Positions 5,599-62,344 of a DNA stretch of 64,000 nucleotides are shown here, one piece after another (within the stretch, counting starts at the first letter, position 1; every line of letters starts with the position of its first letter). A program made the translations under genes and the position numbers. Where the stretch lies: positions 62,001 to 126,000 of the forward strand of contig NW_025767431.1 in the NCBI RefSeq assembly GCF_003918875.1, written 5' to 3'. This DNA comes from Haliotis rubra. Lineage: Eukaryota. The notes below the pieces were generated by a model that was not told the origin of the DNA, searched no databases, and saw nothing but the letters and a program-made list of their open reading frames with translations.

Positions 5599-7007
5599 AT
5601 GGATCGATTTCTACTGGGGATTCTTGTTGTGACTGTGGTCGTGTCGGTTGAGACAAGGTCAACATGTGGGCGTGGTCAGTTCCTGGACCCAGACTCACAC
5701 ATGTGTGAATACTGTAGCATGGTGTGTGATCACATGGAGATACAGAACACTGCCAGTAAATGCAACAATAATTGTCCAGGTGAGATGTATGAGAGGCTGT
5801 ATCATTACTAGTATCAATATTGATCTTATATATGTCAGTTATGAATGTTTTATCGGATGTATTTATATATACAATGTATCTAGATGTAAATACAATTTAT
5901 GTTCATTAATTGTGATGCATGAAGCAATATACACTCCAATAGGCTCTTGGTCACACGTTACACACAGTCCGTCAACTAACCGGATTAACCGAGTTATTGA
6001 TTAACAGTGTGCTATAAATAACTAAGCTAGACAAGAAAGCATGAATGGATTATAACAACTCTACTGCTTAACCCGGGGAGGTGATCCGACATGTGTGTTG
6101 TTTAACCTGCTTTTCAGCGCAAAGGACGGATTAACCTGAGTGGGTGTGTTTCAACATGCGCCTTGGGATGAACCTAAAACATGGTGGTGAATCTCTTAAA
6201 TGAAAAACACAACTGGACGCTTATTACTTATGTCTACTTCACTGTTTTACTTACAGCTAAACACTGTTAAATCCAAAGCCACTATCATCATATATTATCT
6301 AAGACTATGCTACTTTGTCACCTAGGTCGACACTCGCACATATCTTCGATTGTCACGAGGCATTCAATTTAACTAGGTTTCACTAATTTTAACACAAGGG
6401 AATAAAATTCCCTGTCTTCTTTTAATCACCAATATGTAAGCGAACAGTATGATATATAATTACCTGACCACTATTCACAGATTTCCTTGCAAAGACTACC
6501 TCGACTACAGGATCAACTTGGGTTTCAACGCTTCCAGCTCCAGCTGGTCTGAAAGATGTAGAGACTACATCAAGGACGAATTCACCTTCTAGTCTGGCTG
6601 TGGTCGTACCTGTTGTCTCAATTGCAGCTGTCGTCGTCATCCTTGCTTTATCACTCTACCACAGACAGAGGTTGCACCAGATGTGCTTGAAAGTCCAGTG
6701 TTACTGCCACACCAAACGTCCTGTGCAGGTGGTCGATGGTGGCAATGGTGGACCTGACGACGTCCCAACACCAAATGGTTTGAATATGTATTACGTTGTC
6801 TAATAAGTTGAATACGTTGTGTCAAAGTTGAATATGTTAGGTCATAAGATGAAAACGTTGTGTTATACGTTGAATATGTCAGGTCATAAGATGAAAACGT
6901 TGTGTTATACGTTGAATATGTTCAGTCATAAGATGAAGAAACTTTACTGCGTTGTCATAACCATGGCGATTAAATGTTTCCTCTTTCAAGAGAATAAGCA
7001 TAAGTAG
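5599..7007 (+). CDS. Receptor A1: single-CRD TNF-receptor-like type-I membrane protein (TACI/BCMA/Grindelwald-type)
   Basis: Exon 5599-5779: signal MDRFLLGILVVTVVVSVET + CGRGQFLDPDSHMCEYCSMVCDHMEIQNTASKCNNNCP, phase-1 G|GTGAGA. Exon 6481-6777: ttcacag| S/T stalk, TM VVVPVVSIAAVVVILALSLY, tail with PVQVVD, phase 1. Putative last exon 6991-7007 (ENKHK*) is uncertain; without splicing the frame stops at 6803. Confidence 0.85.
6802..6937. repeat. 42-bp minisatellite in intron 2 of A1 (~3 units)
   Basis: Unit AAAACGTTGTGTTATACGTTGAATATGTTCAGTCATAAGATG. Confidence 0.85.
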
Positions 7008-8203
7008 TCATATGTAAATAAACGATGACAGTGTTCGCGGTAGGAAAAAAAAAGCTTTGCGTTCCTAAATAGCATAGCCCAAGAATTTTTGGGCATGCAC
7101 AGAAGGAGTATGCCCCAACCAGAAAGCGGCGACGTCTCTTGGGGAGTCACTTCCTTGCATTTCAGAGATTGTTGTCATCATTCGTAAATCAAATAAGCTG
7201 AGAAAATGTTTATTTTATTGTTTCCTTGGGGAGCTTATGTACGTTTTTCGGTTACTTGTTCTCAGAACACAAAATGCTTTGCGTGCAGAACACGCAGGTT
7301 TTTTTGCGTTAACGCGAACAAAAATAAATCAGTGATGTATGTGCTACGTCTTTTGCGGCCTCTTCAACGAGCGATATCTCAATGGTCTGATCGTGAATAC
7401 GTTTCCTTCTAGAAATCCTGATGTGTGACGTCACAACGATGGATCGCAACTGACGGTGATCTTCAAAGAAACTATGGAGACATCTTTCACGTTGCATGAC
7501 AGAGGGTCATCTGTGACACAAACAATTCCAGACATTGTATATTTGTGGATCATGGAAATTCTAGGCCACCTGAAGATATTGAAGTACAGTGTCCATGAAT
7601 ACAACGCGAATCATCATCATCATTTTCTTCTTCTTCATGATCATCATAATCATCATCACCACTCGATTCCGATCTCCATATCGTTTTGTATATTTCCTAA
7701 CAAAGAGCTTTTATCTATTCATTCAATTATTGATGTTTGTTCATACAATCAACTTCTTTATTTCTGTAAATAAACAGTTAAAAACAACATAGCGTGTTTT
7801 GTCTTCATTTAATGTGCTAATGTTTCGATAAATCCGCAAAGAAAAGAAATCATTTTTAACTTAACTACCTCCTCGTAGCTAGTCCCACCTGGGAATTACA
7901 CATTTCTAGAAACGGCTACAGTGACCAGCATATCAAACAGACCAACCTTGATGTCAATGGATGGCACAGGTAACGGGATAGATATTCGCCGGATGCATGC
8001 ACACTGTCATTTCCAATATAGCATGTCAATAGTCACCGTTTACATTTGTTATTATCCCCAATCGCGCCTTTAGCGCTAAGCGGGGGGTGTAGTATTAATT
8101 ACTACGTCCGTATGTACGAATTGGAATATCGTAAGAACCATTCACTAGATTCTTTTCATATTTGGTACCTAGGTTCATCACAGTAAAAGAAAGGTCCAGG
8201 TCA

Positions 8204-9968: not shown

Positions 9969-10838
9969 TGTATAGTGTCATGGCCGTGGAAGTATGACCA
10001 TGGAAGAAGATCAAGTATAATGTCATGGCTGTGTAAGTATGGCCATAGAAGAAGTTCAGGTATAGTGTCATGGCTGTGGAAGTATGACCATAGAAGAAGT
10101 TCAAGTATAGTGTCATGGCTGTGGAAGTATGGCCACAGAAGAAGTTCAGGTATAGTGTCATGGCTGTGGAAGTATTACTATAGAAGAAGTTCAAGTATTG
10201 TGTCATCGCTGTTGAGGTAGGACCATAGAAGAAGTTCAAGTATAGTGTCATGGCTGTGGAAGTATGGCCACAGAAGAAGTTCAGGTATAGTGTCATGGCT
10301 GTGGAAGTATGGCCACAGAAGAAGTTCAGGTATAGTGTCATGGCTGTGGAAGTATTACTATAGAAGAAGTTCAAGTATTGTGTCATCGCTGTTGAGGTAT
10401 GACCATAGAAGAAGTTCAAGTATAGTGTCATGGCTGTGGAAGTATGGCCACAGAAGAAGTTCAGGTATAGTGTCATGGCTGTGGAAGTATTACTATAGAA
10501 GAAGTTCAAGTATAGTGTCATGACTGTGGAAGTATGACCATAGAAGAAGTTCAAGTATAGTGTCATGGCTGTGGAAGTATTACTATAGAAGAAGTTCAAG
10601 TATAGTGTCATGACTGTGGAAGTATGACCATGGAAGAAGTTCAAGTATAGTGTCATGACTGTGGAAGTATTACTATAGAAGAGGTTCAAGTATAGTGTCA
10701 TGACTGTGGAAGTATGACCATGGAGGAAGTTCAGATATAGTTTCATGGCTGTGGAAGTGTTACTAGAGAAGAAGTTCAAGTATAGTGTCATGGCTGTGGA
10801 AGTATGGCCATAGAAGAAATTCAAGTATTGTGTCATCA
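9969..10838. repeat. 45-bp minisatellite (~19 units)
   Basis: Unit TATAGTGTCATGGCTGTGGAAGTATGACCATAGAAGAAGTTCAAG. Confidence 0.95.
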
Positions 10839-14300: not shown

Positions 14301-14474
14301 GTTACTTAAAGTCAGGATCGTGTGTGACTATTTGTTACTTAAAGGCAGGATCGTGTGTGACTATTTGTTACTTAAAGGCAGTATCGCGTTTGGCTATTTG
14401 TTACTTAAAGGCAGGATCGCGTGTGGCTATTTGTTACTTAAAGGTAGGATCGTGTGTGGCTACCTGTTACTTAA
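11330..14474. repeat. 33-bp satellite, left part of the large array (~95 units)
   Basis: Tandem AAAGGCAGGATCGTGTGTGGCTATTTGTTACTT variants. Confidence 0.97.
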
Positions 14475-32245: not shown

Positions 32246-33739
32246 ATGGATCGATTTCTACTGGGGATTCTTGTTGTGACTGTGGTCGTGTCGGTTGAGA
32301 CAAGGTCAACATGTGGGCGTGGTCAGTTCCTGGACCCAGACTCACACATGTGTGAATACTGTATCATGGTGTGTGATCACATGGAGATACAGAACACTGC
32401 CAGTAAATGCAACAATAATTGTCCAGGTGAGATGTATGAGAGGCTGTATCATTACTAGTATCAATATTGATCTTATATATGTCAGTTATGAATGCTTTAT
32501 CGGATGTATTTATATATACAATGTATCTATATGTAAATACAATTTATGTTCATTAATTATGATGCATGAAGCAATATACACTCCAATAGGCTCTTGGTCA
32601 CACGTTACACACAGTCCGTTAACAAACCGGATTAACCGAGTTATTGATTAACAGTGTGCTATAAATAACTAAGCTAGACAAGAAAGCATGAATGGATTAT
32701 AACAACTCTACTGCCTAACCCGGGGAGGTGATCCGACATGTGTGTTGTTTAACCTACTTTTCAGCGCAAATGACGGATTAACCTGAGTGAGTGTGGTTCG
32801 ACATGCGCCTTGGGATGAACCGAAATCATAGTGGTGAATCTCTTAAATGTCTACTTCACTGTTTTACTTACAGCTAAACACTGTTAAATCCAACGCCACT
32901 ATCATCATATATTATCTAAGACTATGCTACTTTGTCACCTAGGTCGACACTCGCACATATCTTCGATTGTCACGAGGCATTTAACTAGGTTTCACAAATT
33001 TTAACACAAGGGAATAAAACTCTATCATCTACTGCCTCCTGTAATGTGCTGTCGTCTTTTAATCACCAATAAGTAAGCGAACATTATGGTATATAATTAC
33101 CTGACCACTATTCACAGATTTCCTTTCAAAGACTACCTCGACTACAGGATCAACTTGGGCTTCATCGCTTCCAACTCCAGCTGGTCTGAAAGATGTAGAG
33201 ACTACATCAAGGACGAATTCACCTTCTAGTTTGGCTGTGGTCGTACCTGTTGTCTCAATTGCAGCTGTCGTCGTCATCCTTGCGTTATCACTCTACCACA
33301 GACAGAGGTTGCACCAGATGTGCTTGAGTGTCCAGTGTTACTGCCACACCAGACGTCCTGTACAGGTGGTCGATGGCGGCAATGGTGGACCTGACGACCT
33401 CCCAAGACCAAATGGTTTGAATATGTATTACGTTGTCTAATAAGTTGAATATTGAATGTTAGGTCATAAGATGAAAACGTTGTGTTATACGTTGAATATG
33501 TTCAGTCATAAGATGAAAACGTTGTGTTATACGTTGAATATGTTCAGTCATAAGATGAAAACGTTGTGTTATACGTTGAATATGTTCAGTCATAAGATGA
33601 AAACGTTGTGTTATACGTTGAATATGTTCAGTCATAAGATGGAAACAACATGTAGGTTTTCTATATGTTAAGTATGTGAGAAACTTTACTGCGTTGTCAT
33701 AACCATGGCGATTAAATGTTTCCTCTTTCAGGAGAATAA
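32246..33739 (+). CDS. Receptor A2: near-identical paralog (or allele) of A1
   Basis: Exons 32246-32426 and 33118-33414; putative last exon 33732-33739 (tttcag|GA GAA TAA, GE*). CRD differs from A1 by one residue (S>I); exon 2 differs by 8 residues. Confidence 0.85.
33440..33645. repeat. 42-bp minisatellite in intron 2 of A2 (~5 units)
   Basis: Same unit as 6802-6937, with more copies. Confidence 0.9.
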
Positions 33740-34877
33740 GCATATTAAGTAGTCATATATAAATATACTATGAAAGTGTTCGCGGTAGGAAAAAAAGCTT
33801 TGCGTTCCTAAATAGCATAGCCCCAAGAATATTTGGGCATGCTGAGCAGGAGTATGCCCGAGCCAGAAAGCGGCGACGTCTCTTGGGGAGTCCGGGGTCG
33901 TCACGTCACTTCCTTGCATTTCAGCGATTGTTGTCATCATTCGAAAATCAAATTAGCTGAGAGAATATTTTTTTATTGTTCCCTTGGGGAAATTGTGTAC
34001 GTTTTTCGGTTACTTGTTCTCAGAACACAAAATGCTTTGCGTGCAGAACACGCAGGTAGCAAACACGCAGGTTTTTGCTTTAACGCGAACACTGAATCAA
34101 TGATGATATAATAATTATATAAATTGATTATTCAAAGAGGGATATAAATAAGTGCTGTATGTGCTACGTGTTTCGCGGCCTCTTCAACGAGCGATATCTC
34201 AATGGTCTGATCGTGAATACGTTTCCTTCTAGAAATCCTGATGTATGACGTCACAACGATGGATCGCAACTGACGGTGATCTTCAAAGAAACTGTGGAGA
34301 CAGCTTTCACGTTGCATGACAGAGGGTCATCTGTGACACAAACAATTCCAGACATTGTATATTCGTGGATCAGGGAAATTCTAGGCCACCTGGAGATAAT
34401 GAAGTACAGTGTCCATAAATACAACACGAATCATCATCATCATTTTCTTCTTCTTCATGATCATCATGATGATCATCATCATCCGATTCTGATCTCCATA
34501 TCATTTTGTATATTTCCTAACAAAGTGCTTTTATCTATTCATTCAATTATTGATTTTTGGTCATACAATCAACTTTTTAATTTTTGTAAATAAACAGTTA
34601 AAAACAACGTGGCGTGTTTTGTCTTCATTTAATGTGCTAATGTTTCGATAAGTCCGCAAAGAAAAGAAATCATTTTTAACTTAACTACCTCCTTGTAGCT
34701 AGTCCCACCTGGGAATTACACATTTCTAGAAACGGCTACAATGACCAGCATATCAAACAGACCAACCTTGATGTCAATGGATGGCACAGGTAACGTGATA
34801 GATATTCGCCGGATATACATGTATGTACACTGTCATTTCCACTTTAATATAGCATGCCATTGTCACCGTTTACATTT

Positions 34878-36403: not shown

Positions 36404-39400
36404 ATGTCGTGCCAACGCTCTGCTATTCTGGTTCTGCTGATTTTGACCAATGTGGCACTGGACCCTGTTTGCAGGGAGGACCAGTACTATGATGTACATG
36501 CAGGGATGTGTGAGTATTGCTCCATCATATGTCAACATGCAGAGATCCAAGGGACGGTGGAGAAGTGTGGGAGGAACTGTCCAGGTAAATTATGTGTTAC
36601 TGTACAGAACCGTAAAACTGTCCAGGTAAATTATGTGTGACTGTACAAACCGTAAAACTGTCCAGGTAAATTATGTGTTACTGTACAGAACCGTAAAACT
36701 GTCCAGGTAAATTATGTGTTACTGTACAGAACAGTAAAACTGTCCAGGTAAATTATGTGTTACTGTACAGAAACGTAAAACTGTTCAGGTAAATTATGTG
36801 TTACTGTACAGAACAGTAAAACTGTTCAGGTAAATTATGTGTTACTGTACAGAAACGTAAAACTGTCCAGGTAAATTATGTGTTACTGTACAGAAACGTA
36901 AAACTGTCCAGGTAAATTATGTGTTACTGTACAGAACAGTCAAACTGTCCAGGTAAATTATGTTACTGTACAGAACCGTAAAACTGTCCAGGTAAATTAT
37001 GTGTTACTGTACAGAACAGTCAAACATCCATACAAATATAGTCGCGATGAAATTGGCTGCTAGTTTATTTGACTTTGTTTTTCTCTACCTCCTTAAATCA
37101 TATGTTGTCGGCATTAAACTATATCCAGTCAATTTCTGACATAACTTGTTTCCTTGTCTGGAAACAAAACCTTGATCACCTTCATGATCAAGAAAGAAAC
37201 TCGTTTCTCCCAGTCGGGACGTTGCAGTGAATGATTCCATCTATTCCTGCACTGCCGGAAGAATAGTTGCGATTAAGATATAGTTAAACTAAAGACATGC
37301 TTATTGACTCTTAGTTTGCCGTATTGCAACATGCATCCCAGGAAGTCTGGTTGCAGAACATTCACTTCGACTTTCACGTTTTGTGATTGGATGAGAGCAA
37401 CCACGTGACAACACAGAGTACCATGAACGATCTATTTGTTCTAAATGCTTATGAATCAGAATGCGGATGAAATCTCACAAGATTAACCTTCTGGTTTGTG
37501 ATTGGTTAACAGCGATCACGTGGTGCAGATATTCAAGATTAATCTTGTCACGTGGCCTGGATGAATAACATAAGATTAACCTGAAAGCGTGACATAGTAC
37601 GCATGGACTTTAGTGAAATCATTATCATATCTACAAAACTGTTGTTACTGTAATGTTATCATGTAATCAACGAGTACGTATACCCATTAAGAACGATTTT
37701 GACTGCACTGGTATGACACATACTTCAGTAAATCCAACACAACATTTGGGCCTTGTCAAACGCTGCAGCGGATTAATCTCGCAACTGGAAAGTCCATGTT
37801 TTATATTTAGAAGCAGCCTTGAGCGGTTAACCGCACAAGGAAGGAAACGGTTTTTTTCGCTTCCAGTAAAGTTACTTTGTGAATTTAACAGTATCGAGAA
37901 TTCTCTCAGGTTATGATGGCATAGATGAAGAATTGTCCACAGAAATAGAAATATATGTAAGAAGTGACTCTGTGGTTTAATGTTGAGTATTAAGGCCTGA
38001 AGCTAGAATGGGAAAATTGATAGAATAGCGGTGGGTTTGCTAAATTTCTCGCCGTTAGTTTGCTTCAAATGTGCTGAACATTTTCGAAAACATAGACTGA
38101 CTTCGATATTTTTGCGGTGATATTGCTGGAATAATGCTATAAGCGGCGTAAAACTAAAACTCACTCACACACTCGATATGTTTTCTTTAAGTTGCTGTGA
38201 TCAAAACCAGTTTACACAACGGTNNNNNNNNNNNNNNNNNNNNNNNNNNNNNNNNNNNNNNNNNNNNNNNNNNNNNNNNNNNNNNNNNNNNNNNNNNNNN
38301 NNNNNNNNNNNNNNNNNNNNNNNNNNNNNNNNNNNNNNNNNNNNNNNNNNNNNNNNNNNNNNNNNNNNNNNNNNNNNNNNNNNNNNNNNNNNNNNNNNTG
38401 TTTCTGACCCTAAGGATATGTCACCACTAAGGCCACGAAGACATCGTCAACAACGGCGTCTTTGTCGTCTCCATCGCTACCCTCACCATCATCATCAGGC
38501 TGGTTACCCTGGCAGACATCCCTTGTCACCCTCACATCAGTTGTAATCACAGGTTGTGTCACGGCGCTTGTCGTCGCCAACAGAGAGTCAGTCAGGCGGT
38601 GTATTAGACGGACCCGAAACACGTGTAACCATGGCAACCACGCGCTGTATCCTGTGGAAGGAGGCACCCATGGTTCAGAATGTACGTTACGTTGGGTGTA
38701 CCCAAATTCGTTTTTCAGAGTTTGTTTTGCAACTAATTCTTTGCATTATCCAGAACACTAAACTTTCCAAATATTAGCGAGAGACTGAATGGGTGAGTGA
38801 GCATAGTATATAAAGGTGAGGTGAGGTGAGGTGAGGTGAGATGAAATTGGGTTTTACGTCGTGCTGAGAATATCCCATCATATGACGACGTGCATGCGTG
38901 TGTTTGTGTATGTGCGGCTGCTTGTACTAGCCCAGACTTAAGCTGGTTTTATAGTGCTAGCCATGAATACCCTACTCAGACACATTATACTGACTCCGAG
39001 CCGACCAGTCCTTGTTGTATCCATTAATGCCGAGCGCCAGGCAGGGGCCAACAAGTACCATATTTTAACATCTTTTGGTATGACGCGGTCGGGGATTGAA
39101 CCCGCGACCTTCCGCTCTCCGGGCGGACGCTCTAACCACTACACCACGGAGGCGGTCAGTATATTAAGAACTTATTTGAGCAAAATCGCAGTGAGGTAAC
39201 CAGAAATGGGCTTTACATTGTTCCCAGTAGGGCATCGAACTCAAGTGACTAACGAACACCTCAACCACTAGGCTAACCCACAGTGCCTATATACATACAG
39301 GTAAGCGTGGTTTGATGTACCACTACTTAGGACGTTATTTCATTAATCCGAGCATGTCAGTTGATTTCGGAGGAAGGCCCGGTTTGACCAAACCTGCTTA

Positions 39401-39790
39401 TTATAACCATTGCCATAGTCTGTCTCACAGTCCCTGAACCACATTATTTACCCTACTGCTAATCTGAATCTCTGGTCTCCCTGGGACTCCTTTTCCATTT
39501 ATATGGGTTTGTTTGTTATACTATCAAAATTATATATATTCAGAGACTGAGCGTTAGTCTACCATTGCCACTGCCCAACACGAACGCACGGTTGTTAGAT
39601 AAAGAGACCTAAGGGAAGCAACTCCCTTAGATAAATCAGTGTCTGGACCATCTCTGGTACGAGAATTAAAAGACTTGTAACAGAAGCAATAAAGGTAAAT
39701 CATGTTGTATGAAATGCTGCAAACAAACACATTTGACATATTTCAATCTGTCTTGCAGATACCATGGTAACCGAGCAAGAGAGAGTTTAA
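36404..39790 (+). CDS. Receptor B: single-CRD TNFR-like type-I membrane protein
   Basis: Exon 36404-36584: signal + CREDQYYDVHAGMCEYCSIICQHAEIQGTVEKCGRNCP, phase 1; 181 nt as in A and E. Exon 38415-38681: GYVTTKATKTSSTTASLSSPSLPSPSSSG stalk, TM WQTSLVTLTSVVITGCVTALVVA, donor T|GTACGT. Exon 39759-39790: tcttgcag|, YTMVTEQERV*. Intron 1 spans an assembly gap. Confidence 0.82.
36575..37024. repeat. 41-bp minisatellite (11 units) containing the exon-1 splice donor of B
   Basis: Unit AACTGTCCAGGTAAATTATGTGTTACTGTACAGAACCGTAA. Confidence 0.92.
38224..38398. other. Assembly gap (175 N)
   Basis: Run of N ending 16 nt before exon 2 of B. Confidence 1.
38815..39157 (-). mobile_element. tRNA-derived SINE, nested in an older SINE
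   Basis: Reverse strand begins GACCGCCTCCGTGGTGTAGTGG (A box) ...GGTTCAATCC (B box) and ends in a (CTCAC)n tail. Inverted copy at 44049-44398. Confidence 0.85.
39416..39561. mobile_element. MITE with 9-bp TSD (Mutator-like), copy 1
   Basis: TSD CCATTGCCA at 39407-15 and 39562-70. Imperfect TIR TAGTCTGTCTCACAGTCCCTGAA / TTCAGAGACTGAGCGTTAGTCTA. Confidence 0.8.
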
Positions 39791-43093: not shown

Positions 43094-43096
<3 letters not shown>

Positions 43097-43119
43097 TATA
43101 TATATATATGTATATTTAT

Positions 43120-46486: not shown

Positions 46487-49400
46487 ATGGTGGCACATGC
46501 CACGTTATTAATTCTTCTTCCTTGTCTGGGGAGAATTGCCTGTGTCCAAGGTAATTATATACGTTCAAGAATAACTTTGTAAACATTAATTCAGATTAAG
46601 ATTTTTTGTTGTATAGAAAGACACAGTCAGTGTTACATTAACCCTATCTGTGTTGTTGTGAGGGTGTACCAAGGTAGGAAAGATACACCACAATGTATTA
46701 CGTATCTGTTACCAGTGGTAGGTCGACTGTTAAATATGAAACGTTCACGAACTGTAACATGTATTCTTGAACATACACGTGTGGAACACTTGAACAATCA
46801 GACACTGACGAAATGACATATACCTCACTGTTTATCATACCCCTCATAAACGCTATAATCATATTGAATAACCATTACGTACTTACGTTGCTTTTCTGAA
46901 TTTTCATTATATATCAGTAAACTATTTAGTACTTTGAATATAAAAGATAAACGATCCGTATAATTTGACATTTCGTAATCGGACCTCAATAAGCTATTGA
47001 TACATATTTATGGATAGTTGTACTGGCTCCTTGTCATTCACTCGGTGCAATGGTTCACAGTCTTGTCGGTTTATTATTGTTGTTTTGCTATCATTTCTCA
47101 TAATGGCATGGATTATAACTGACATGAAATGTTCCAGTGTGTCCCCGAGACTTCTATTACAGCACCGACACCGACAGGTGTGAAAGCTGTGCAGAATTGT
47201 GCCACCAAGCAACGGTCAGAAAAACAGAAAGTACATGTCGAAGACTGTGTCCCGGTGAGACGTCTCAAAGCATCCAACATCCAACCTCGATCTTAAAGTG
47301 AAAGTGCAATTAACCGTATTCATTAACAAACATCCCTCAACGATAATATATCCGTCACTTTTTTATATGTATCACAAATGCAATTTGTATATTGACAATA
47401 ATATGTGTTATGAAATAGGGATATGTTCATTCAGTTTAGATAACTACAATACAAGACATTATGTTGAGTATTGTAACATTTTGTTGATGTCCTGCAACAC
47501 ACTGTGTAGCGGCCACAAAATTTCCGAGTCCAGTGCTGGGATTCGAACCCCGGACCTTCTGATCCCAAGTCGGACGCCTTGTACACATGTCCAAACAGGT
47601 TAACCCTGTCGGCAAGCTGAGAAGGTAAGGATGTCATCTGTGGGATGACTCCACACTACCAGAGATCATATAATATGGTATCTGACACTACACACTGTGC
47701 TCTCTACCTGTTTATCATTTGTAGTGAGATGTTTGTGTCTTCAGTGGTAAGTGACACATGGTGTTTGTGTTTGTAGTAGGAGACACAGAAGTAACAAAGA
47801 CGTCCTTGACACTGAAGAAAGCGTTACATGGCAACAACACGCCATCAGTGAACAAACTGAACTCAACTGAAGAACGGTTACCACACACACTGGACGACAG
47901 TCAAGGTAATCTGGCGTTACATTTAAGTAAATCCTATCTATTAATCCGGAAGATAATATTGTCATCTGAATATTTTAATCCGGAAGAAACACCAGTCTCC
48001 TGTTGTCATCTCTTTGGGGTGTTTTGATTTACGTGGATGTACGCATTCTGATTCACCTTTTAGCATACTTTTCACTGACAGTTTTAGGCGTTTCGTAGCT
48101 CGTGAGTTGTTACCCAGACTAACATATAATCCCAGAAGTAAAGTTATCGTATCTAAAGATCAGCCTGGATCAGACAATGTCGAAGCGTAGCGCAACACAC
48201 CCCAGGTACCAGGCTGATCTAAACATGTCCTTGGAAACTGGTTTTACACAGTAACATAATCATGTCGGCGAGCAAACCGGACTTTAACTGTCCTTTCCCG
48301 ACATAATTGGTAAAATTACAACTGCTATAGTCACAATATGTTTGAAAGACTGCCACCTTTGGCAATGTTCATGAATCATTACGAAACAGTGAACACTTGT
48401 TCCAGATATAGATGGGAATGTAGGCACGAGAGCTGAAATCACCCCTGTCATTCAGTCAGTTGACTGTGTACCCCTTTTACTTGTAATTGTACAACTATAT
48501 TTTGAGTAAAAGTAAATATTCTCGCCAATGGGCCAAATGTTTTCCGGCCATGGGCGAGATATTTTAACATCGCTCTAAATTAGCCAAATCAAGTCAAAAT
48601 GAGTTGAATTTGTGTCATGATACTTATATACATACTTTCGTTTATTTACAACCTCCAACAAATGAATTCTGAGCGAAACTAAACATTCTCGCCCATGGGT
48701 TTAAATTTTGATTTTTCGAGAAATAAATGTTTCATTTTTTCATCCTTTTCATATATTCATGACAACTGCATGTTTTATTCGTCAAATCCTTTCTCAGAAA
48801 GGGGCCACAGTGCGGAGAGTTTCTGGACTTTTGTGAGTCCAGAATTAAATTGTGACGTGTTAATATATTTCAGTTACCATATACACAGTGTGTACGTTAA
48901 TGTTGCTCATCATGATCATGTGCTGTGTATCGGCTGTACTTCTAATGTCTGGACGATATCCATCTTGCTGCTGCTGTAAACGAAGAGCACTTTGTTTGAA
49001 GTATCGAAGGACCGGAAGTGGAGGTAAGATCGATTACCAACCATGAGTAGTCACAAGTCTTGCCTACTCTGCATTCATGATCAGCTCTGAGACAGTAATG
49101 CATGATAACAGATACGAAAACATAATCAAATATAGTAATCGTTACTCCGGTGTCCAGTTAATGTCCCTTAGAAAGATATGTGTAAATGAGTAAATATATT
49201 CTGTTGAATATATATGGCTGATCAAGCTGGTTTGGCTCTTTGCCAACAGAGAGCCCTTCACACGCAGCCAAGAGAACAATGTGTGTTTTTTCATCAAAAT
49301 GTAAATAGGAAATGTTATGCAATGAAGTAATGAGACTGTCTAACACCTAGTGGATGCCGCATAGTATATATACCTTTGAGACATGGTGGCCTGGTTTGGT

Positions 49401-49810
49401 CATTCTAATGTTGTTTTCGCAATGCTTGTTCTGAGGTCTATCCATTGTACGATCGAGAATAAGTGCAGAAAGTGGAGAATCATAAAATTCATAGGATTAG
49501 ACCAGTATACAGCCTCAGGCCTACCCAGGCCAACAAACTAGACCTCTCCATTTTTTATCAGTCCAGTAAAATCATTCGTTTCTGCACCTCTGGCATTAAT
49601 GTGATAATTATCTTTAGGAAAATACATTGCAAATATGCTGATCTCACTGACAAAATGTCGTTCTTGCTTCTTAAGTATTGTACCAATTAAAGTTGATCGA
49701 CACCCGATTATTCTCGGTGCCCTATGTTTGGTACCTTCCAATCTGTGGACTAACATTGGGGGAGAGTACATTGGGAGGTTAGGGACCGTACACAAGTAAT
49801 GGCTAAAAGG

Positions 49811-49845
<35 letters not shown>

Positions 49846-51899
49846 GGGGACGGGTCTTCGAGGGTCGGGGAGGATGATTTAAGGGGGCCCACTCATTGTG
49901 TTCTGGGGAGGTAGGGGGTCATCAATTTTGTACACATGTACTAGGGGATGGGGGGGGTTGTCAGCAATTTTGTACATATAAATATTTCAAGATCGTGCTT
50001 GAAATTATAGGAAGGGGGGGTAATTGATTTTGTACATGAAATGCAGGGGGGAGGGGGCTCCTACTTTGTACATAAATTTAAGGGAGGGTCGTTAACATTG
50101 AACAGGCCTCTCCATAAAAATCATCATCCCCCCCTGGCCATTAATTATGAACGCTCCCTTACCAGCAAAGAAAACAGCCCTTCTAACACTCTGAGGAATG
50201 CAGAAGCCTGCGGTATTAGGCAGATAAACGTTCTTATAGTGTTCGACCTGGCAGTGCCTCCATGGAGAAATCCCATTCGCTCATTGTGCTGCCTTGAGCT
50301 GCGTGTAGTGAGCCCAACCAGGTATCATCATCTGCATCGTTTATCCGCATCAACGTTATGAACATATTTTACTGAAAAAAGTTCTAGTAAAAAAAAATAT
50401 AATATTCACCCTGAGACTGCATATATTTGCTTCAGGGTCTTTAAGTTTATCTACATGTACTCTAATCTTTAACGTAAGCATTAAAGGAGCCATCGCGGTC
50501 ACGGTTGAAGTCATACATATGCATTTGCTTTTGTCTAAAACCTTTCCTCTGTCTTGTAATTCTTTCAGAATTTGAAGAAGTGAATGCACAGAAGCAGCAT
50601 GATGGTGGGACACTAATAATGCAGATCCCCTTGGGTAATTAGAAGATAAAGCTACTCTGTTTTCAATTTTGCGGTCCTTTATCGTTGATTTAAGACCGCT
50701 AAATGTAATTTAAAACCGAACGCGTTAGCGTGAGGTTTTAAATTAAACATTTAGCGGTCTTAAATCAACGATAAAGGACCGCAAATTTGAAAACAGAGTA
50801 GCTTTATCTTCATTCTAGCACGACTGATAAGCGTTTAAAAACCGAACTGTTTGGCGCGCAAGAACACAAGGCGCAAAGGGGCCTTTTTCCTGGAAATCGC
50901 TTTGGAACCGTCCCGTTGAGGGACAGGTTGTGTAATGAACAAAATCAGTTATTTTCAACAACATAAATGCTATATTTCAGGAACCAGTATGCTTGTATTT
51001 GTAACAAGTAGCATACATAAATAAATAAAAATACAGTTTATACTGTGAGCAAGTACAATTATTTGATTTTTCTCAAGCGAATTATTGATCTCCCCTACTG
51101 TATGACAATCGACTCGCCCAAATGCAAGCCGTGAACTCGCTAAGTTTAGTCGCCGCCAACTTTATTCACGGAAATAATTGTTGATAACCACCCTACTATT
51201 CCCAATTTGGAAAAGACCTGACATGCCACGTTTTATGTGGGATACATGGACAGTGGAAGTGGAAGGACTGGGCATTACGGCCGGGACGGAAGCTGTCAGG
51301 TTAGGACGTGTGGGCCGACGTGTGTTGTCGACGTCAACACACGTAGATCTGGACCCGCTTTGAATATACTGCCGCTTTTGCGCTGCTGACGGATTTTCCA
51401 GCTTCGTGGTTTCTTCTCTGGGATTAGGGTCAAGAAATTCTTCTTCAAACCATTCGCTTTTTACTTAAAAACACCAAAGATGCTGCCGAGATAGAAATTG
51501 CCGATGTCCGACATGTTTGTTTACAAACAATAGGGTCAACGAGTTCGTTGTATTCATACGCGATGAATCGGTCACTTTAATTAGCGGTCCTTAAACTGTC
51601 ATTTAAGTACGGTTTTGATGAGCTCTCAGCCAATCAGAATCGAGTATCACACATTGTCGTGCTATCTTATCGATTTTGAAACGTACTTTTACGATAAATT
51701 TAGTTTTTATAGTTTAGCGTCTCGAATTTAATTCATGGTTGGATGTCCGTTTTTCTCTATCCATTTAATCCAATATATTTCACTGTAACTGACTTTTAAA
51801 AAATTATTTGTTTGTTTGTCTTCAGGTTCTGTTGACAGTGCATTGTTACTATTGCCCATAATATCTCCGATAAAACTGAATGGATACGTTCTACCCTGA
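46487..51899 (+). CDS. Receptor C: six-exon single-CRD TNFR-like type-I membrane protein, essentially missed by the ORF track
   Basis: All introns are phase 1, GT-AG. Exons: 46487-46550 (MVAHATLLILLPCLGRIACVQ); 47138-47254 (VCPRDFYYSTDTDRCESCAELCHQATVRKTESTCRRLCP); 47777-47905 (stalk; TAGTAG tandem acceptor); 48874-49023 (TM VTIYTVCTLMLLIMIMCCVSAVLLMSG, then CCCCKRR); 50569-50634 (EFEEVNAQKQHDGGTLIMQIPL); 51826-51899 (GSVDSALLLLPIISPIKLNGYVLP*). The last two exons are less certain. Confidence 0.85.
49782..50158. mobile_element. PIF/Harbinger-like MITE with TTA TSD
   Basis: TTA|GGGACCGTACACAAGTAATGGC...GCCATTAATTATGAACGCTCCC|TTA, with internal G-runs and (TG)n. Confidence 0.7.
50642..50811. 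repeat. Near-perfect 170-bp palindrome, probably the end of a ~1 kb non-autonomous element extending to ~51665
   Basis: GAAGATAAAGCTACTCTGTTTTCAA..GCGGTCCTTTATCGTTGATTTAAGACCGCTAAATG is mirrored at 50748-50811. TAGCACGAC at 50816 is inverted at about 51656-51664. Confidence 0.9.
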
Positions 51900-56891: not shown

Positions 56892-59798
56892 ATGGATATA
56901 ATAGTACTAGTACTACTGAGTGTGTGTGGTCAGGTAGTGTCTGTGACACTGCGACAGTGTCCGGACTCGTCTGTGTGGAGCGTTGACTTGCACGACTGTG
57001 TGCCTTGTAAGGAACTATGTGGACGTGGGAGTAAGTACATGTAATACTACGTTTCACCTGTTTTGATTTCTTGTAATATGTCCATATACGTGATTGGACA
57101 TCTGGATATGTGTGAATTATTAGGCGTGTATGTCGCATGTGAAAATGTTAACGCCCTAATGTGGGTTGGGTAGCCTAGCGGTTACAGCTCTTCGCTTGTC
57201 ACGCCGAAGGTCCGGTTTCGAATCCCAACATGGGTACAATGTGGTGTCACCCGCCATGATATTTCTTGAATATTGCTAACGAATACATAAAACCATGTTC
57301 ACTCATTACTGGTTCCTTATTGCATACATTTAAAAGGCCCCAACACCCTTTCCCTAATCATAAACAATGCGCACGTGTTTACATTCGTTTTGAAAACTTT
57401 CCTTTAACCTGTTATAGAATAGACGTAAAACAATCCGAGATGTGTCGGCCTCGGTTGGTGTTCCAATGGATCACGTGTAATGTTAGTTGTAACATAACTA
57501 CAAGTGTAGGCTTGGCAAGAAACAATCACCATAGTTCCTACAGGGCATCCCACACACACCGGCTCAGCGATGACTTAACATAACACCACTGCCACAGGCA
57601 AATTTGCATATCACGTGACCGGACTTTTCTCTTGTTTGTAATCAAACGCGCATATTCATAATAAGAAGAGACTGGACTCACGAAAGCTTTTCGGCGCTCT
57701 CTTCATAATGTTTTACATTGTTACATATATATTCTTCCACAACTGCGACAGTAAGGTCTATGACAGTACATATTTAGATATCAAACTGGCTGCATCGTTT
57801 GCTCTCCATCAGCCTCGATGACAGCACGTGGAGCCGTACAACCTATGTAAACAAAGGATCGCTACGCAAATCGAAATAGTGTTACATGTTTTAGGATATT
57901 TTCTCAATGAAACTAAACCATTCTATCAAAGATGTTTGATTAGTTGTGTAGACTCGTCAAAAATAAAAGAGTTGAGAAATATGTAAATTATATTGAATGG
58001 ACGGTGCAAGATGTGACGAATCGTCACATTTTTCTGGCCTGTGGCAGAGATACTATGCTGGCTTGTCGCATGGAACTCTGGGTAGAGAGTGAGCATCCCA
58101 GGTACAAAGTACACAGGAAACGTACACGTAGAATGGCAAAATGCTGTCCTCGGGACACACCTGAAACTTCCGCGTCTAAAAATAGCGCATACGTGTTTAT
58201 AGTGAATGCGCGGGCGTTGGCAAATGGTAAAGACTCCTGAAGCTCTAAATGTATATCTACATTGACTATCTGTGCTGCTTGGGAATAATATTGAGCTGCT
58301 CCTCATCTTAACAAATTGTGGTTGAATGTATGGGGAGAGTCCATTTAGAGTACATGTCTTGTCAGCAAGCTAGTTCTTGAATCTGAGGGAAAGCACAAGA
58401 TCCATGTGACACTCGTACACTCACAGCACTAAAATATTAGTCTTTGTCATTCATTCATTGTCTTTGTCATTCATATTTTCTTTCATTCATTCATTTGCCA
58501 GAAAAAGATACAGCCAGTTCACCTCAGAAGTCCCAACAATTCCGTCGACATGGAAACGGCAGACATAAACGCGATGATTATGATTGTGGCGACTTCAACT
58601 ACTACGACCCCGCCATACACGGATGTACGCCGTGTGACCACCTGTGTGACTACCACGAACACCAAGGAACTACAAAGCGTTGCATGGAGAAATGTCCAGG
58701 TAGTATGTCTTCGTGGTACCTATAGCTTCATGTTAAAGTTACGTAAAACATTTTCTTCTGAAATAAGCATGTTCTAATTTATAGATAATATATAGATACT
58801 TTTTACGAGTATTATGTGTATATGCAAAGTATATTGAAAATCATCCCCAGGTCATTCCGATTTCTTTAATTGACCATAAGCGTTATAATAGGTTGTTATA
58901 TATATGTAAATACTAGTTAACAGTAGTGAACAGGCATGGCTATTTTTGCGTGTTAACAGATTACTATGTAAAGGATGGGACCTACGGCCAGTTCACAAGA
59001 AGAGAGGTCTACAAAGGATACGAGTCCTGATGATTCCAAAGGAGACGCTACCTTGACTGTAGTATTGATTATATTTGCGATAGTGTTTGTCCTGTGTACT
59101 GGCGTTATGGTTTGGAAACGGAATCAGATTTGGCAGTTCCTGGAGAGACAGTGTACAACCGATGAGGAGAAAACCTCGGTGCCATGCTGCCAGGAACAGG
59201 GAATCTGCGAGTCTGCCAATTCCAAAGTGAGTAGTAGTTAGTTTTGTTATACTTGGGGGAGGACAAAAACCTATGATCGTGGGTTCGAACCTTAAACTGA
59301 CCTGCACTAACTGTACCAAGGTCTGTCTGGACCATACCCAATGTGAGTGTAAGACATGAACAAATGTGTACCGAAACTGAAACTGTAGTAATCTTGACTT
59401 GGCACACATTCTAGACCTTCTGTATTAGGTATATTTGATTCAGGGTCAGTAGGACAGTCGATATATTCTTGAGAACTTTTAATTTATGAATTTCAGCCCC
59501 TTTGACCCACTCCCTAGGACCAATATGCCAGCCAGTTACAGAAACTCGCCACGAGAACAAAGCAGACCAGTACCTATACACAGAGACGTTTGCTGAGATT
59601 GACCTACGGTATGCTGTATTGGATGAACCGTTCTCACAGACCACAACACCATCCCTAAACAAACCTGTTCCACGGATCACCCCAGTCAGACTGCCTCCAT
59701 CTATCACCCAACCATCCCTAAACAAACCTGTTGCACGGATCACCTCAGTCAGACCCTCTCCAACTATCAACCACCCCAACGCAAACCGTATCTGCTGA
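56892..59798 (+). CDS. Receptor D: TNFR-like protein with one partial and one complete CRD; frameshifted as assembled
   Basis: Exon 56892-57030: MDIIVLVLLSVCGQVVSVTLRQCPDSSVWSVDLHDCVPCKELCGRG, A|GTAAGT. Exon 58502-58699: linker ending RHKR + CGDFNYYDPAIHGCTPCDHLCDYHEHQGTTKRCMEKCP. Exon 58960-59226: DYYVKDG, an extra base near GGG 58977-79, then stalk and TM LTVVLIIFAIVFVLCTGVMVW. Last exon from 59497, ending PL* at 59505 or, in another phase, a Pro-rich tail to 59798. Confidence 0.72.
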
Positions 59799-59924
59799 TG
59801 GCACCAACCTGACAACCTACCCCAGTCACTCCACAATCCCCAAAGTTGTTGATACTGATAGTGATGATACACACTCGTGAGGAGGAAAGTGACGAAGGCA
59901 CCTGTTAACATCGAACATGAACTA

Positions 59925-60187: not shown

Positions 60188-62163
60188 GAACATGAACTAG
60201 TTTGTATTTTATGCCCCTTGTCAATCTTATACTCAAACTTGAAAACCAGTTGCGATACACGTTAAAGGATAAAACCTAAAGTAATTAAATTGATGGAATT
60301 GATTCAGACTAGTTTAAGTTGCTTCTGATAGAAAAACACCGTTTTGTGTTACTAGCTCATACTGTGATTGCTCGTGTTTACGCTCGCATGTACGTCTTTC
60401 GTTTTTCTTATTTGAAGGATGACAATCTCAACTTTACGTATGTATCTTGAGTGAGTGAGTATGGTTTAACGTATATATCTTTAGTGGGTGAGTGAGTGAG
60501 TATGGTTTTACGCATCTTTTTGCAATATTCCAGACATAACCAGGCGCGGGACACCAGAAATGGTGTTCACATATTGTACCCATGTGGGATTCGAACCCGG
60601 GCCTTCTGCGCGAGGAGCAGACGCTTTAACCATTCGGCTACCCCAACGCCCCGTATATATCTTGAAGTGATATGTATATGATTACCAGTGGAAGTTCTAT
60701 TGTTTTATATACACACACCTGCTTTTATACGATTTTGCGATGTTCCTATATTTGTTGAGGAGTGTGATGCTCTATTTTAGGTGCAGATATACCTGCGTTG
60801 AATAACATAGTGTGTAAGTGCTTCACTGAATGTCTGTGTTGTTTGCAAAGTAGATGTTATTAGTTACATGATAGATGGTGACCTATTGTCTTGTAGCGTG
60901 ATGGCATTACCTTGACTGTACAGTTACTGGGTGCATTGCACATGTACATGTAATTAATGTAAAACTATCCATGGGTAAGAATGTTGTTGAAATATTCTAC
61001 ATTCTGTATATAAGCACAGACGAACATATCAGCTGAATATGTCTTACATATGTTACTTCATACATAACTTGTGTTCAAACACATACCTGTTGTTAAGAGT
61101 ATATTCATCCAGTGTTGGGAGAGTGTGTGAGTGAGTGAGTTGGGGTAACTCCTTCTCCGTCGAGTAACAATATCTTAACATGTAGGCCTATTTTTTAGAG
61201 CCAGTATAATATTAAATAATACGTAGCTATGAACACAGGTAAATTACAGAACGGATATTGTAGCGTCGAGTTTGGGACGTATTTTGGAATGACGTAAAAT
61301 TGCAGAATATCATCTCTGGTAAAACTAGTTCCCAGCTAAAGCCCAACTCCGCCGATAGTTTTCTAACTGCTCATATGTGAAAAGTGATTCACTGGCTGCA
61401 GAGTGCGTGTTGCTTTGCAAATACTCCATGTCTCATACACTCTGTCAACAAAGAATATGGTGACATGCACTTCATAAAGTACTTCTGTATGATGTCATGT
61501 TCATTCATCACGTGCACGTATAAACGCATTAATACGTTGAATATCACGTTATTTGTGATATGATGTATTTCACTTATAATTTACAACTGTTGACATTTTC
61601 CCTTGAATTCTAAATATTGTTACAAACTTGTTATAAAATTAACATTTTTAATAAAATTATTTTGTAAATTTCCATGTTTTACTTAATTTCATTTTAGATT
61701 GCGAGAAAGCTCGTAGAATTGCCAGCAGAACTATTTTTGACAAACACTGATTTAATTAGGTATGCATACACAGAAAGTATTCACCCAGGTCTGAGGGTAG
61801 CGAAATATACAACACACACTAAATTGCTTTTTTGTGCATACATATCGAAGTTGCTTTTTGGAATTTAAGTTTGCAGTGATCCAGCAACTATTTTAAACCA
61901 TGTAACGCTTGATATATTTTTGTTCTATTTTTAAAGCGTATATTTTATGTTTGTCCGGCTTGGAGTGTTCAACTTAATAGCTGATAGTTATATCCATGCC
62001 GAAGGTATACTATGGTATTTGAACGGCCCGCCACGATTACGTATTATACCACGTGGGTTATCAAACCATGTGACTCTCATTCAAGTTCAGATCACTCGTG
62101 TTTACATGACTATCACAACTGTCAAACAGCGGTCAGAGCACGCTAAACGTGTATGTATTGAGC

Positions 62164-62344
62164 ATGAAAGTCACCAATCTCAGCAGGATCTGCTTTATCT
62201 TGTGTGGAATCATCGTCCTTCTGTCCTCGGTGTTTGCGGAATGTCCTGTTGGCAACATTTTGAATAACCTGTCTCAGACGTGTGTACGCTGTGTTGATGT
62301 CTGCGACCTCGCACGTGATCCTGGCTGTCTCAGTCGATGTCTGG
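62164..62344 (+). CDS. Receptor E exon 1 (signal peptide + CRD); remaining exons not identified, probably beyond the window
   Basis: MKVTNLSRICFILCGIIVLLSSVFAECPVGNILNNLSQTCVRCVDVCDLARDPGCLSRCL, then phase-1 G|GTGAGT. 181 nt as in A and B; Cys spacing 12-2-3-7-3. Confidence 0.82.

What the first reader, a model, noticed from the sequence alone, without database searches (positions are those of the whole stretch)
5599..62344. Tandem cluster of six diversified single-CRD TNF-receptor-like genes (TACI/BCMA/Grindelwald type) in an invertebrate
Seen: six + strand loci share a signal peptide and a CRD with C-x12-C-x2-C-x3-C-x11-C-x3-C-P (x7 in E). All have a phase-1 intron directly after the last Cys+1 residue, and the first coding exon is 181 nt in A1, A2, B and E. 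Where visible, an S/T stalk, one TM helix and a short tail follow. Known (recalled, not searched): TACI CRD1 has spacing 12-2-3-7-3 and BCMA 12-2-3-8-3, with an aromatic-D-x-L ligand hairpin; Drosophila Grindelwald has 2-3-11-3. Here the hairpin reads FLDPDS, YYDVHA, YYSTDT, YYDPAI, ILNNLS, so the Cys scaffold is fixed while the ligand-contact loop varies. Inference: an expanded family of death-domain-less TNFRs with different ligand specificities. Short split exons would make it easy for annotation to miss.
Basis: partly seen in the sequence, partly recalled or inferred. Interest (0 to 1): 0.92.

Follow-up and report, generated by a model that had tools for sequence, protein, structure and literature searches.

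The report
Abalone cluster of small TNF-receptor-like genes
This stretch of blacklip abalone DNA holds a tandem row of six small membrane-receptor genes whose cysteine-rich domain belongs with fly Grindelwald and human BCMA/TACI TNF receptors. The genes are real and mostly already annotated as 'uncharacterized', so this is a lineage-specific expansion of a known receptor kind, not a new kind.

Summary
Six + strand exons carry C-x12-C-x2-C-x3-C-x11(x7 in E)-C-x3-C, each followed by a phase-1 GT donor (6 matches against 0 in 200 shuffles).

The window is Haliotis rubra contig QXJH01000716.1. A1, A2, B and C match RefSeq 'uncharacterized protein' models residue for residue, so annotation did not miss them. 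E is also annotated and runs past the window end. D is disrupted in this assembly.

The assembly gap lies inside B's first intron, 16 nt before the acceptor, so no reading frame crosses it.

The TNFR reading is supported:
- CRD profiles hit BCMA (E 1.6e-6 to 5.6e-5), TACI and Grindelwald in the PDB, and human TACI in a 1.8-billion-protein library.
- The AlphaFold model of the x11 CRD fits Grindelwald best (Z 5.0, 40 of 41 residues). The x7 CRD fits BCMA best.

- D and E are two-CRD genes with a furin-like site between the CRDs.
- The hairpin keeps an aromatic-aromatic-Asp motif; only the following residues vary.
- The cluster continues for at least 135 kb beyond the window.

A preprint already reports grnd-like receptors in molluscs, and the scan's first readers noted the same family elsewhere on this contig. 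Ligand binding and TRAF signalling are inferred, not shown.

The parts
5599..7453 (+). Gene A1 = LOC124259290 isoform X2 (172 aa). Exons 5599-5779 (signal peptide + CRD), 6481-6777 (S/T stalk, TM, tail with PVQVVD) and 7413-7453. All introns are phase 1.
   Evidence: The spliced translation equals XP_046549356.1 exactly. Sequence read.
32246..34273 (+). Gene A2 = LOC124259279 (172 aa), a recent duplicate of A1. Exons 32246-32426, 33118-33414 and 34233-34273.
   Evidence: Exact GT-AG mapping of P0001. The duplication spans 3776-8204 against 30249-35056. Exon 1 differs at 1 of 181 nt, against 3.3-5.2% in the introns.
36404..39790 (+). Gene B = LOC124259301 (159 aa). Exons 36404-36584, 38415-38681 and 39759-39790. 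Intron 1 holds a 41-bp minisatellite (36575-37025) and the assembly gap 38224-38398.
   Evidence: Exact mapping of P0004. Gap and acceptor read. Gene span.
46487..50642 (+). Gene C = LOC124259299 (177 aa). Exons 46487-46550 (signal), 47138-47254 (CRD, 117 nt, phase 1-1), 47777-47905 (stalk), 48874-49023 (TM + CCCC juxtamembrane cluster) and 50569-50642.
   Evidence: Exact mapping of P0166.
56892..59877 (+). Gene D, a two-CRD type that is disrupted in this assembly. Exon 1 (56892-57031) has the signal peptide and a four-Cys partial CRD1. Exon 2 (58502-58699) has a basic RHKR site and a full x11 CRD2. The stalk/TM exon follows from about 58960 to 59226, and the tail exon from 59499. At the A-run 58970-58972 the reading frame is offset by one base relative to the H. 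rufescens and H. cracherodii orthologues. RefSeq calls only a 185-aa product from 58975-59798.
   Evidence: tblastn with P0006 and P0151, sequence reads and called genes.
62164..64000 (+). Gene E = LOC124259263 (290 aa). Exon 1 (62164-62344) has the signal peptide and an x7 CRD1. The gene continues to window-equivalent 65802, so the RRRR site, CRD2, TM and tail lie beyond the window end.
   Evidence: P0169 and its locus. tblastn of P0011.
38224..38398 (.). Assembly gap, inside intron 1 of gene B. No coding frame crosses it.
   Evidence: The gap letters were not filled or looked up.

Best explanation
The window holds the left part of a large tandem cluster of small type I membrane receptors of the TNF-receptor superfamily in Haliotis rubra. 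Each gene encodes a signal peptide, one CRD (A1, A2, B, C) or two CRDs (D, E), a Ser/Thr-rich stalk that is probably O-glycosylated, one TM helix, and a 44-140-residue tail without a death domain.

The CRD is a beta-hairpin pinned by one disulfide (Cys1-Cys2), followed by a helix-loop-helix carrying C-x3-C...C-x3-C. With an 11-residue inter-helix loop it matches the Grindelwald C2 module. With a 7-residue loop it matches BCMA/TACI.

Inferred mechanism: three receptor CRDs dock in the grooves of a trimeric TNF-family ligand. They would do so through the conserved aromatic-aromatic-Asp hairpin and the inter-helix loop. The variable residues after the Asp would set ligand preference. Clustering of the tails would then recruit TRAF adaptors through PxQxxD or (P/S/A/T)x(Q/E)E-type motifs, feeding JNK/NF-kB-type pathways.

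Shown here: gene structures, homology and fold class. Inferred only: ligand binding, TRAF recruitment, and processing at the furin-like site in D and E.
For: Exact agreement of A1, A2, B and C with RefSeq proteins through GT-AG, all-phase-1 introns.

A profile of the six window CRDs found 153 proteins at E<=0.001 among 1.84 billion. Of the best 150, which were the ones listed and examined, 104 carry the Cys pattern, and one of those is human TACI at E 3.6e-4.

Pfam on the 104 relatives (E<=1): BCMA-Tall_bind 34, TACI-CRD2 21, TNFR_c6 11, Fn14 6, BaffR 3.

A profile of 145 CRDs against the PDB: BCMA 5.6e-5, TACI 8.5e-5, Grindelwald 0.021, with all six Cys aligned. The x7-type profile built around E's CRD1, with the unidentified P0142 left out: BCMA 1.6e-6.

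AlphaFold model of the A1 CRD: pLDDT 87.5, hairpin plus helices. Best structural match is Grindelwald, Z 5.0, 40 of 41 residues, rmsd 2.5; BCMA is next at Z 3.2. In the E CRD1 model, all ten entries listed at Z>=2 are BCMA (best Z 3.3) or Grindelwald (Z 3.0-3.1).

Atlas neighbours: molluscan 'TNFR-Cys domain' clusters, Fn14, TACI, BAFF-R and BCMA.

TRAF2-type motifs are enriched in the tails of 80 relatives. (P/S/A/T)x(Q/E)E occurs in 30 against 15.7 expected (z 4.4), PxQxxD in 7 against 1.5, and PxQx(S/T) in 14 against 4.6.

The CRD exon of A1/A2 is conserved above its introns.
Against: The window's own proteins reach no Pfam family even at E<=10.

Foldseek E-values are not significant, as expected for about 40 residues but still weak. 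Z 3-5 is in the range the tool's notes call common.

The disulfide connectivity of the model could not be read, because no coordinates were available.

The Leu of the BAFF/APRIL-binding DxL motif is not conserved. The second hairpin disulfide of Grindelwald is absent.

The TRAF motifs are short, and the shuffle control does not remove shared ancestry. No expression, binding or signalling data exist here.

dN/dS between A1 and A2 is about 0.86 on only 15 changes, so constraint outside the CRD is not demonstrated.
Confidence: 0.8

Rival explanations
1. The proteins are small cysteine-rich membrane proteins unrelated in function to TNF receptors. Their Cys spacing and hairpin-plus-helical-hairpin shape would be convergent, as in other C-x3-C...C-x3-C helical hairpins.
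For: Scorpion OmTx helical-hairpin toxins appear at E 0.024-0.09 in the same PDB search. Vanabin-2 and CBM_14 each match 11 of 104 relatives weakly. The structural Z-scores are modest.
Against: TNFRs fill 13 of the top 14 places in the profile search and the top 12, aligned over the whole domain including the hairpin. Human TACI is retrieved from 1.84 billion proteins. The architecture (signal peptide, CRD, stalk, TM, short tail) is that of Grindelwald/BCMA-type receptors.
Confidence: 0.07
2. They are true TNFR-fold proteins, but several copies are decoys, non-signalling, or decaying duplicates rather than a set of receptors with distinct ligands.
For: D has lost two Cys of CRD1 and has a one-base frame offset relative to its orthologues; only its 3' part is annotated. 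A1/A2 dN/dS is about 0.86 outside a conserved CRD exon. C lacks a recognisable TRAF motif.
Against: A1, A2, B, C and E have intact reading frames and splice sites. Orthologues of C, D and E are kept in H. asinina, H. rufescens or H. cracherodii. The D defect may be an assembly error.
Confidence: 0.13

Closest known systems
Drosophila Grindelwald (Grnd; PDB 6ZSY/6ZT0; Palmerini et al. 2021, PMC8024323)
   Same: Single-CRD type I receptor without a death domain. Beta-hairpin followed by a helix-loop-helix with C-x3-C-x11-C-x3-C, the same spacing as Grnd Cys57/61/73/77. Best structural match of the A1 CRD model (Z 5.0, model 1-41 on Grnd 37-78). A conserved aromatic residue sits at about the place of Grnd Phe46. 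Grnd binds Traf2 through its tail.
   Different: Grnd has 8 Cys (an X2 hairpin with two disulfides); the abalone CRDs have 6 (one hairpin disulfide). Sequence similarity is weak (E 0.021). The Egr-contacting His66-Asn67 positions hold other residues here (the 'IQ' of a conserved EIQGT loop). Drosophila has one Grnd gene; abalone has a large tandem family, some members with two CRDs.
Human BCMA (TNFRSF17) and TACI (TNFRSF13B)
   Same: Six-Cys CRD with spacing 12-2-3-8-3 (BCMA) or 12-2-3-7-3 (TACI CRD1). E's CRD1 has exactly 12-2-3-7-3. The aromatic-aromatic-Asp hairpin is shared (YFD in BCMA, FYD in TACI). They are the best sequence hits (E 1.6e-6 to 8.5e-5). Short tails signal through TRAFs (established knowledge).
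   Different: BCMA and TACI have no signal peptide (type III, from memory); the abalone proteins have one. The Leu of the DxL motif is not kept. Most abalone CRDs have an 11-residue, not a 6-8-residue, inter-helix loop. Whether the second module is nested (C2) or D2-type was not determined.
Fn14 (TNFRSF12A)
   Same: Single CRD with one hairpin disulfide plus a nested helical C2 module (A1-C2), the combination that the abalone six-Cys pattern most resembles. Appears among the top fold and profile hits.
   Different: Spacing differs (2-8-2 rather than 3-11-3, from memory), and profile E-values are only 0.6-0.7.
grnd homologues of molluscs and annelids in the preprint 10.1101/2024.07.27.603686
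   Same: Single-CRD Grindelwald-like receptors found by a custom HMM in Mollusca (Crassostrea virginica, Mizuhopecten yessoensis), Annelida (12 paralogues in Capitella teleta), Brachiopoda and Cnidaria.
   Different: In the main text Haliotis is cited only for its TNF ligand, and the supplementary species tables were not readable here. The tandem genomic cluster, the two-CRD members mixing x7 and x11 CRDs, and the furin-like site did not come up in the term searches of the main text; the paper was not read in full. Whether their HMM picks up these exact genes could not be checked.

Membership tests
TNFR superfamily, small-CRD class (BCMA/TACI/BAFF-R) | Six-Cys CRD: hairpin disulfide (C-x12-14-C), then C-x2-C-x3-C-x6-8-C-x3-C | tested here: met
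   E CRD1 is 12-2-3-7-3, identical to human TACI CRD1. The other five have the same pattern with an x11 loop.
TNFR superfamily, small-CRD class (BCMA/TACI/BAFF-R) | Significant sequence-profile similarity to solved BCMA/TACI CRDs | tested here: met
   BCMA 1.6e-6 and TACI 0.003 with the x7-type profile, which is mostly Haliotis sequences plus two of unidentified origin. BCMA 5.6e-5 and TACI 8.5e-5 with 145 CRDs. Human TACI 3.6e-4 in the 1.84-billion-protein library.
TNFR superfamily, small-CRD class (BCMA/TACI/BAFF-R) | Match to Pfam BCMA-Tall_bind / TACI-CRD2 at the curated threshold | tested here: not met
   The window's CRD exons hit no TNFR Pfam model even at E<=10. Among the 104 pattern-bearing hits, 34 and 21 match at E<=1; the strongest TACI-CRD2 score is most likely from the human TACI entry among them.
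TNFR superfamily, small-CRD class (BCMA/TACI/BAFF-R) | DxL motif at the hairpin tip that contacts BAFF/APRIL | tested here: not met
   Asp is kept in 88% of 145 CRDs, but the +2 position is G/V/H and others. In the window it reads DPD, DVH, STD, DPA and NNL.
TNFR superfamily, small-CRD class (BCMA/TACI/BAFF-R) | Binding of a trimeric TNF-family ligand | not testable with these tools
   No complex prediction or assay was available.
Grindelwald | C2 helix-loop-helix module with C-x3-C-x11-C-x3-C | tested here: met
   Spacing 3-11-3 in A1, A2, B, C and D CRD2 and in 120 of 144 CRDs counted in the relatives. The Grnd consensus is from PMC8024323.
Grindelwald | X2 hairpin with two intercalated disulfides (8 Cys in the ectodomain) | tested here: not met
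   Only one Cys pair flanks the hairpin, giving 6 Cys per CRD.
Grindelwald | Overall fold superposes on the Grnd ectodomain | tested here: met
   VIA-align Z 5.0, rmsd 2.5-2.6, 40 of 41 residues; it is the top hit, clearly above BCMA at 3.2. Z is modest in absolute terms.
Grindelwald | Intracellular Traf2-binding region | tested here: inconclusive
   PVQVVD in A1/A2, TEQE in B and TDEE in D. The motifs are enriched in 80 relatives against shuffles, but they are short and no binding was tested.
Death receptors (TNFR1/Fas type) | Cytoplasmic death domain | tested here: not met
   No Death-domain Pfam hit appears among the 25 families most often matched by the 104 relatives, nor for A2's protein P0001. 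The tails are 44-55 residues in A, B and C.

The most novel reading that the evidence does not exclude
The abalone family links fly Grindelwald to vertebrate BCMA/TACI. One profile reaches both. Single genes (D, E and their orthologues) carry a BCMA-like x7 CRD and a Grindelwald-like x11 CRD side by side, and amphioxus has intermediate x9 members. That would mean the BAFF/APRIL-receptor type of CRD predates vertebrates and B cells. In molluscs it would have expanded, together with the TNF ligands, into a diversified innate cytokine-receptor network encoded in clusters hundreds of kilobases long.
Probability: 0.4. Interest if true: 0.65.

Novelty: new member of a known kind. Interest (0 to 1): 0.5.

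Why it matters
Molluscs have no adaptive immunity but have greatly expanded TNF ligands; the preprint reports up to 27 paralogues in one species. Which receptors pair with those ligands is largely unknown.

A family of at least eight, probably many more, small Grindelwald/BCMA-like receptors in one abalone cluster gives named candidates for those ligands in a farmed species troubled by Vibrio and herpesvirus disease.

The family also gives sequence-level evidence that Grindelwald and the vertebrate BCMA/TACI CRDs are homologous. The Grindelwald structure paper could describe that relationship only as topological resemblance 'in spite of poor sequence similarity'.

In practice, five or more 'uncharacterized' RefSeq loci can be renamed.

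Tried and rejected
- Pfam on the window's CRD exons gave nothing relevant.
- Foldseek against the PDB and Swiss-Prot ranked TNFRs at the top, but with non-significant E-values. I therefore relied on profile searches and VIA-align.
- The word-indexed protein search with a 16-sequence alignment returned only 7 hits and no named TNFR.
- I first modelled C and D with the signal peptide just upstream of the CRD exon. C's candidate (47050) has in-frame stops; the true signal exon is at 46487.
- For D I looked for a phase-compatible acceptor that would join the CRD2 exon to the TM frame. I found none with a proper polypyrimidine tract, so I report a frame offset.
- I considered that A1/A2 might be an assembly duplicate. 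I rejected this because they differ by 3-5% with indels and both have separate RefSeq loci.
- Other long ORFs in the window are satellite read-throughs or retrotransposon fragments, not ligand genes.
- Disulfide connectivity could not be read because model coordinates are not exposed.
- The Grindelwald alignment itself was not printed, because it ranked below the five alignments shown.
Full report
**1. Observation**

A six-frame search for C-x10-14-C-x2-C-x3-C-x5-13-C-x3-C finds exactly six matches, all on the + strand, at 5665, 32312, 36470, 47140, 58585 and 62242. Two hundred block shuffles of the window gave none.

Each match is followed, one residue after the last Cys, by G|GT, a phase-1 donor. 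The first coding exon is 181 nt in four genes: A1 (5599-5779), A2 (32246-32426), B (36404-36584) and E (62164-62344).

**2. The gap**

The N run 38224-38398 lies inside intron 1 of gene B (36585-38414). It ends 16 nt before the acceptor AG at 38413-38414. The RefSeq protein of B maps exactly onto 36404-36584 / 38415-38681 / 39759-39790 with GT-AG introns. No reading frame has to cross the gap, and A1 and A2 have no extra exon in the equivalent intron. I cannot exclude that the scaffold join itself is wrong. I did not look up or fill the gap letters.

**3. Source and gene models**

Homology searches and exact look-ups place the window on Haliotis rubra contig QXJH01000716.1 (GCA_003918875.1); window position w equals record position w + 62000.

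| Gene | RefSeq locus | Length | Exons in the window |
|---|---|---|---|
| A1 | LOC124259290 isoform X2 | 172 aa | 5599-5779, 6481-6777, 7413-7453 |
| A2 | LOC124259279 | 172 aa | 32246-32426, 33118-33414, 34233-34273 |
| B | LOC124259301 | 159 aa | 36404-36584, 38415-38681, 39759-39790 |
| C | LOC124259299 | 177 aa | 46487-46550, 47138-47254, 47777-47905, 48874-49023, 50569-50642 |
| E | LOC124259263 | 290 aa | 62164-62344, then on to window-equivalent 65802 |

- Every intron in A1, A2, B and C is phase 1. The CRD exons of C (117 nt) and D (198 nt) are symmetric 1-1 exons, the arrangement that allows module duplication.
- All five genes are named 'uncharacterized protein'. Annotation did not miss them; it failed only to name them.
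- E has two CRDs separated by RRRR.

D is different. Exon 1 (56892-57031) encodes a signal peptide and only the first four Cys of CRD1, before a consensus A|GTAAGT donor. Exon 2 (58502-58699) encodes RHKR and a full x11 CRD. Relative to the intact 316-318-aa orthologues of H. cracherodii and H. rufescens, the reading frame is then offset by one base at the A-run 58970-58972. RefSeq calls only a 185-aa product from 58975. D is either a decaying copy or carries assembly errors.

**4. Duplication history**

A1 and A2 lie on a duplicated segment (3776-8204 against 30249-35056). The two copies are separated by an 18.4-kb satellite of 33-bp units.
- Aligned sites are 94.8-96.7% identical in the flank and introns, but 180 of 181 in the signal-peptide/CRD exon. 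This points to constraint or gene conversion on that exon.
- Exon 2 changes at the intron rate, and overall dN/dS is about 0.86 on 15 changes.
- Further members lie on the same contig in the same orientation, at window-equivalent 154846 and 176956 (LOC124259278, 263 aa) and at 195820 and 197267.
- First-reader notes of this scan report still more clusters downstream, and TNF-ligand arrays elsewhere in the genome. Those notes are unchecked, apart from the CRDs I saw.

**5. What the domain is**

The window's own sequences reach no Pfam model. Profiles do much better:
- A profile of the six CRD exons puts TACI, BCMA and Fn14 in 13 of 15 PDB hits (E 0.012-0.7).
- The same profile finds 153 proteins at E<=0.001 among 1.84 billion. 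Of the best 150, 104 carry the Cys pattern. Spacing 12-2-3-11-3 dominates (101 of 144 CRDs) and Pro follows the last Cys in 94. One of these hits is human TACI, at E 3.6e-4.
- Pfam on the 104, at E<=1: BCMA-Tall_bind 34, TACI-CRD2 21, TNFR_c6 11, Fn14 6, BaffR 3.
- A profile of 145 CRDs, with human TACI excluded, scores BCMA 5.6e-5, TACI 8.5e-5 and Grindelwald 0.021, with all six Cys in register.
- A profile of the short-loop class to which E's CRD1 belongs scores BCMA 2.8e-8. It still scores 1.6e-6 after removing a sequence of unknown origin.

**6. Structure**

- AlphaFold2 on the A1 CRD with the 145-row alignment gives pLDDT 87.5: a beta-hairpin followed by helices carrying Cys3/4 and Cys5/6.
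- Foldseek ranks BCMA, Fn14, Grindelwald and TACI at the top, but without significance.
- VIA-align puts Grindelwald first (Z 5.0, 40 of 41 residues, model 1-41 on Grnd 37-78, rmsd 2.5), clearly ahead of BCMA (Z 3.2) and TACI (Z 2.1).
- For the E CRD1 model (pLDDT 78), all ten entries listed at Z>=2 are BCMA (best Z 3.3) or Grindelwald (Z 3.0-3.1).
- Palmerini et al. describe Grnd as an X2 hairpin with two disulfides plus a C2 module, Cys57-x3-Cys61-x11-Cys73-x3-Cys77, with Phe46 packed between the modules.

The abalone x11 CRDs share the C2 spacing and a conserved aromatic residue at about that place, but they have only one hairpin disulfide. That A1-plus-C2 combination is formally closest to Fn14.

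**7. Conservation**

Across the 145 CRDs:
- The hairpin reads aromatic (Y 78%, F 18%), aromatic (Y/F/W 86%), Asp (88%). The five residues that follow are variable.
- An I/L precedes Cys4, and a Thr (78%) sits in the inter-helix loop (EIQGT).

So the scaffold and the Asp of the BCMA/TACI DxL motif are kept, while the Leu position and the hairpin tip vary.

**8. Tails**

- No death domain is present.
- A1 and A2 carry PVQVVD (PxQxxD), B carries TEQE, and D carries TDEE.
- In 80 relatives with a TM helix, TRAF2-type motifs exceed shuffles. (P/S/A/T)x(Q/E)E occurs in 30 against 15.7 (z 4.4), PxQxxD in 7 against 1.5, and PxQx(S/T) in 14 against 4.6. The TRAF6 motif is not enriched. Shared ancestry is not controlled, so this is suggestive only.
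- C has a CCCC juxtamembrane cluster, a possible palmitoylation site.

**9. Distribution and literature**

- Relatives come from four Haliotis species, other gastropods (Gigantopelta, Nucella, Babylonia), bivalves (Mercenaria, Ruditapes, Potamilus, Solemya) and amphioxus, where the spacing is x9. None is named as a TNFR.
- Atlas neighbours include molluscan clusters auto-named 'putative TNFR-Cys domain-containing protein'.
- A preprint (10.1101/2024.07.27.603686) already reports 115 grnd homologues across invertebrates. These include molluscs, and annelids with up to 12 paralogues. In its main text Haliotis is cited only for its TNF ligand, and my term searches found no mention of tandem clusters or two-CRD x7+x11 members. 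I did not read the paper in full, and its supplementary tables were not available here.

**10. Verdict**

The mechanism (TNF-ligand binding, TRAF signalling) is plausible but inferred.

It is a lineage-specific tandem expansion of a known receptor kind, in genes already modelled by RefSeq. The more interesting residue is the sequence-level link between Grindelwald and BCMA/TACI, and the two-CRD genes that combine both loop types.

Noticed in passing
window 11333-29773 (also 3379-3987 and 30253-30461): An 18.4-kb satellite of 33-bp units (about 560 copies, 82-90% matches) with strong G-over-C and T-over-A skew. It separates the A1 and A2 duplicates, and shorter arrays of the same unit lie upstream of each copy. 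The long 'ORFs' there are artefacts of the repeat.
   Followed up: partly
window 36575-37025: A 41-bp minisatellite (11 copies, 94% matches) begins inside the last 10 nt of exon 1 of gene B. It repeats the exon end plus the GTAAAT donor eleven times, creating ten extra copies of the splice-donor context in intron 1.
   Followed up: no
window 6803-6937 and 33456-33646: A 42-bp minisatellite lies just after exon 2 of A1 and A2, with different copy numbers in the two duplicates (3.2 against 4.5).
   Followed up: no
window 9970-10836 and 53346-55069: Two further tandem arrays: 45-bp units x19, and 96-bp units x18 (also read as a 284-bp period). They lie between receptor genes.
   Followed up: no
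window 126-677 (-) and 8328-9390 (+): Fragments of non-LTR retrotransposons: an endonuclease/exonuclease/phosphatase domain (E 2.9e-6) and a reverse-transcriptase fragment (E 6.8e-5).
   Followed up: partly
window 59499-59877: The cytoplasmic tail of D and its orthologues contains tandem peptide repeats of the type H-S/P-T-I/T-P-K-Q-T, mirrored by a 63-bp DNA repeat at 59648-59773. Their function is unknown.
   Followed up: no
L003 (record 206771-260566; window-equivalent 144771-198566): More family members lie on the same contig and strand. LOC124259278 (263 aa) has two CRD exons about 22 kb apart. A 234-aa gene has two CRDs at window-equivalent 195820 and 197267. The cluster therefore extends at least 135 kb beyond the window.
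   Followed up: partly
all introns of A1, A2, B and C: Every intron is phase 1, and the CRD exons of C and D are symmetric 1-1 modules. This is consistent with growth of the family and of the two-CRD genes by exon duplication.
   Followed up: yes
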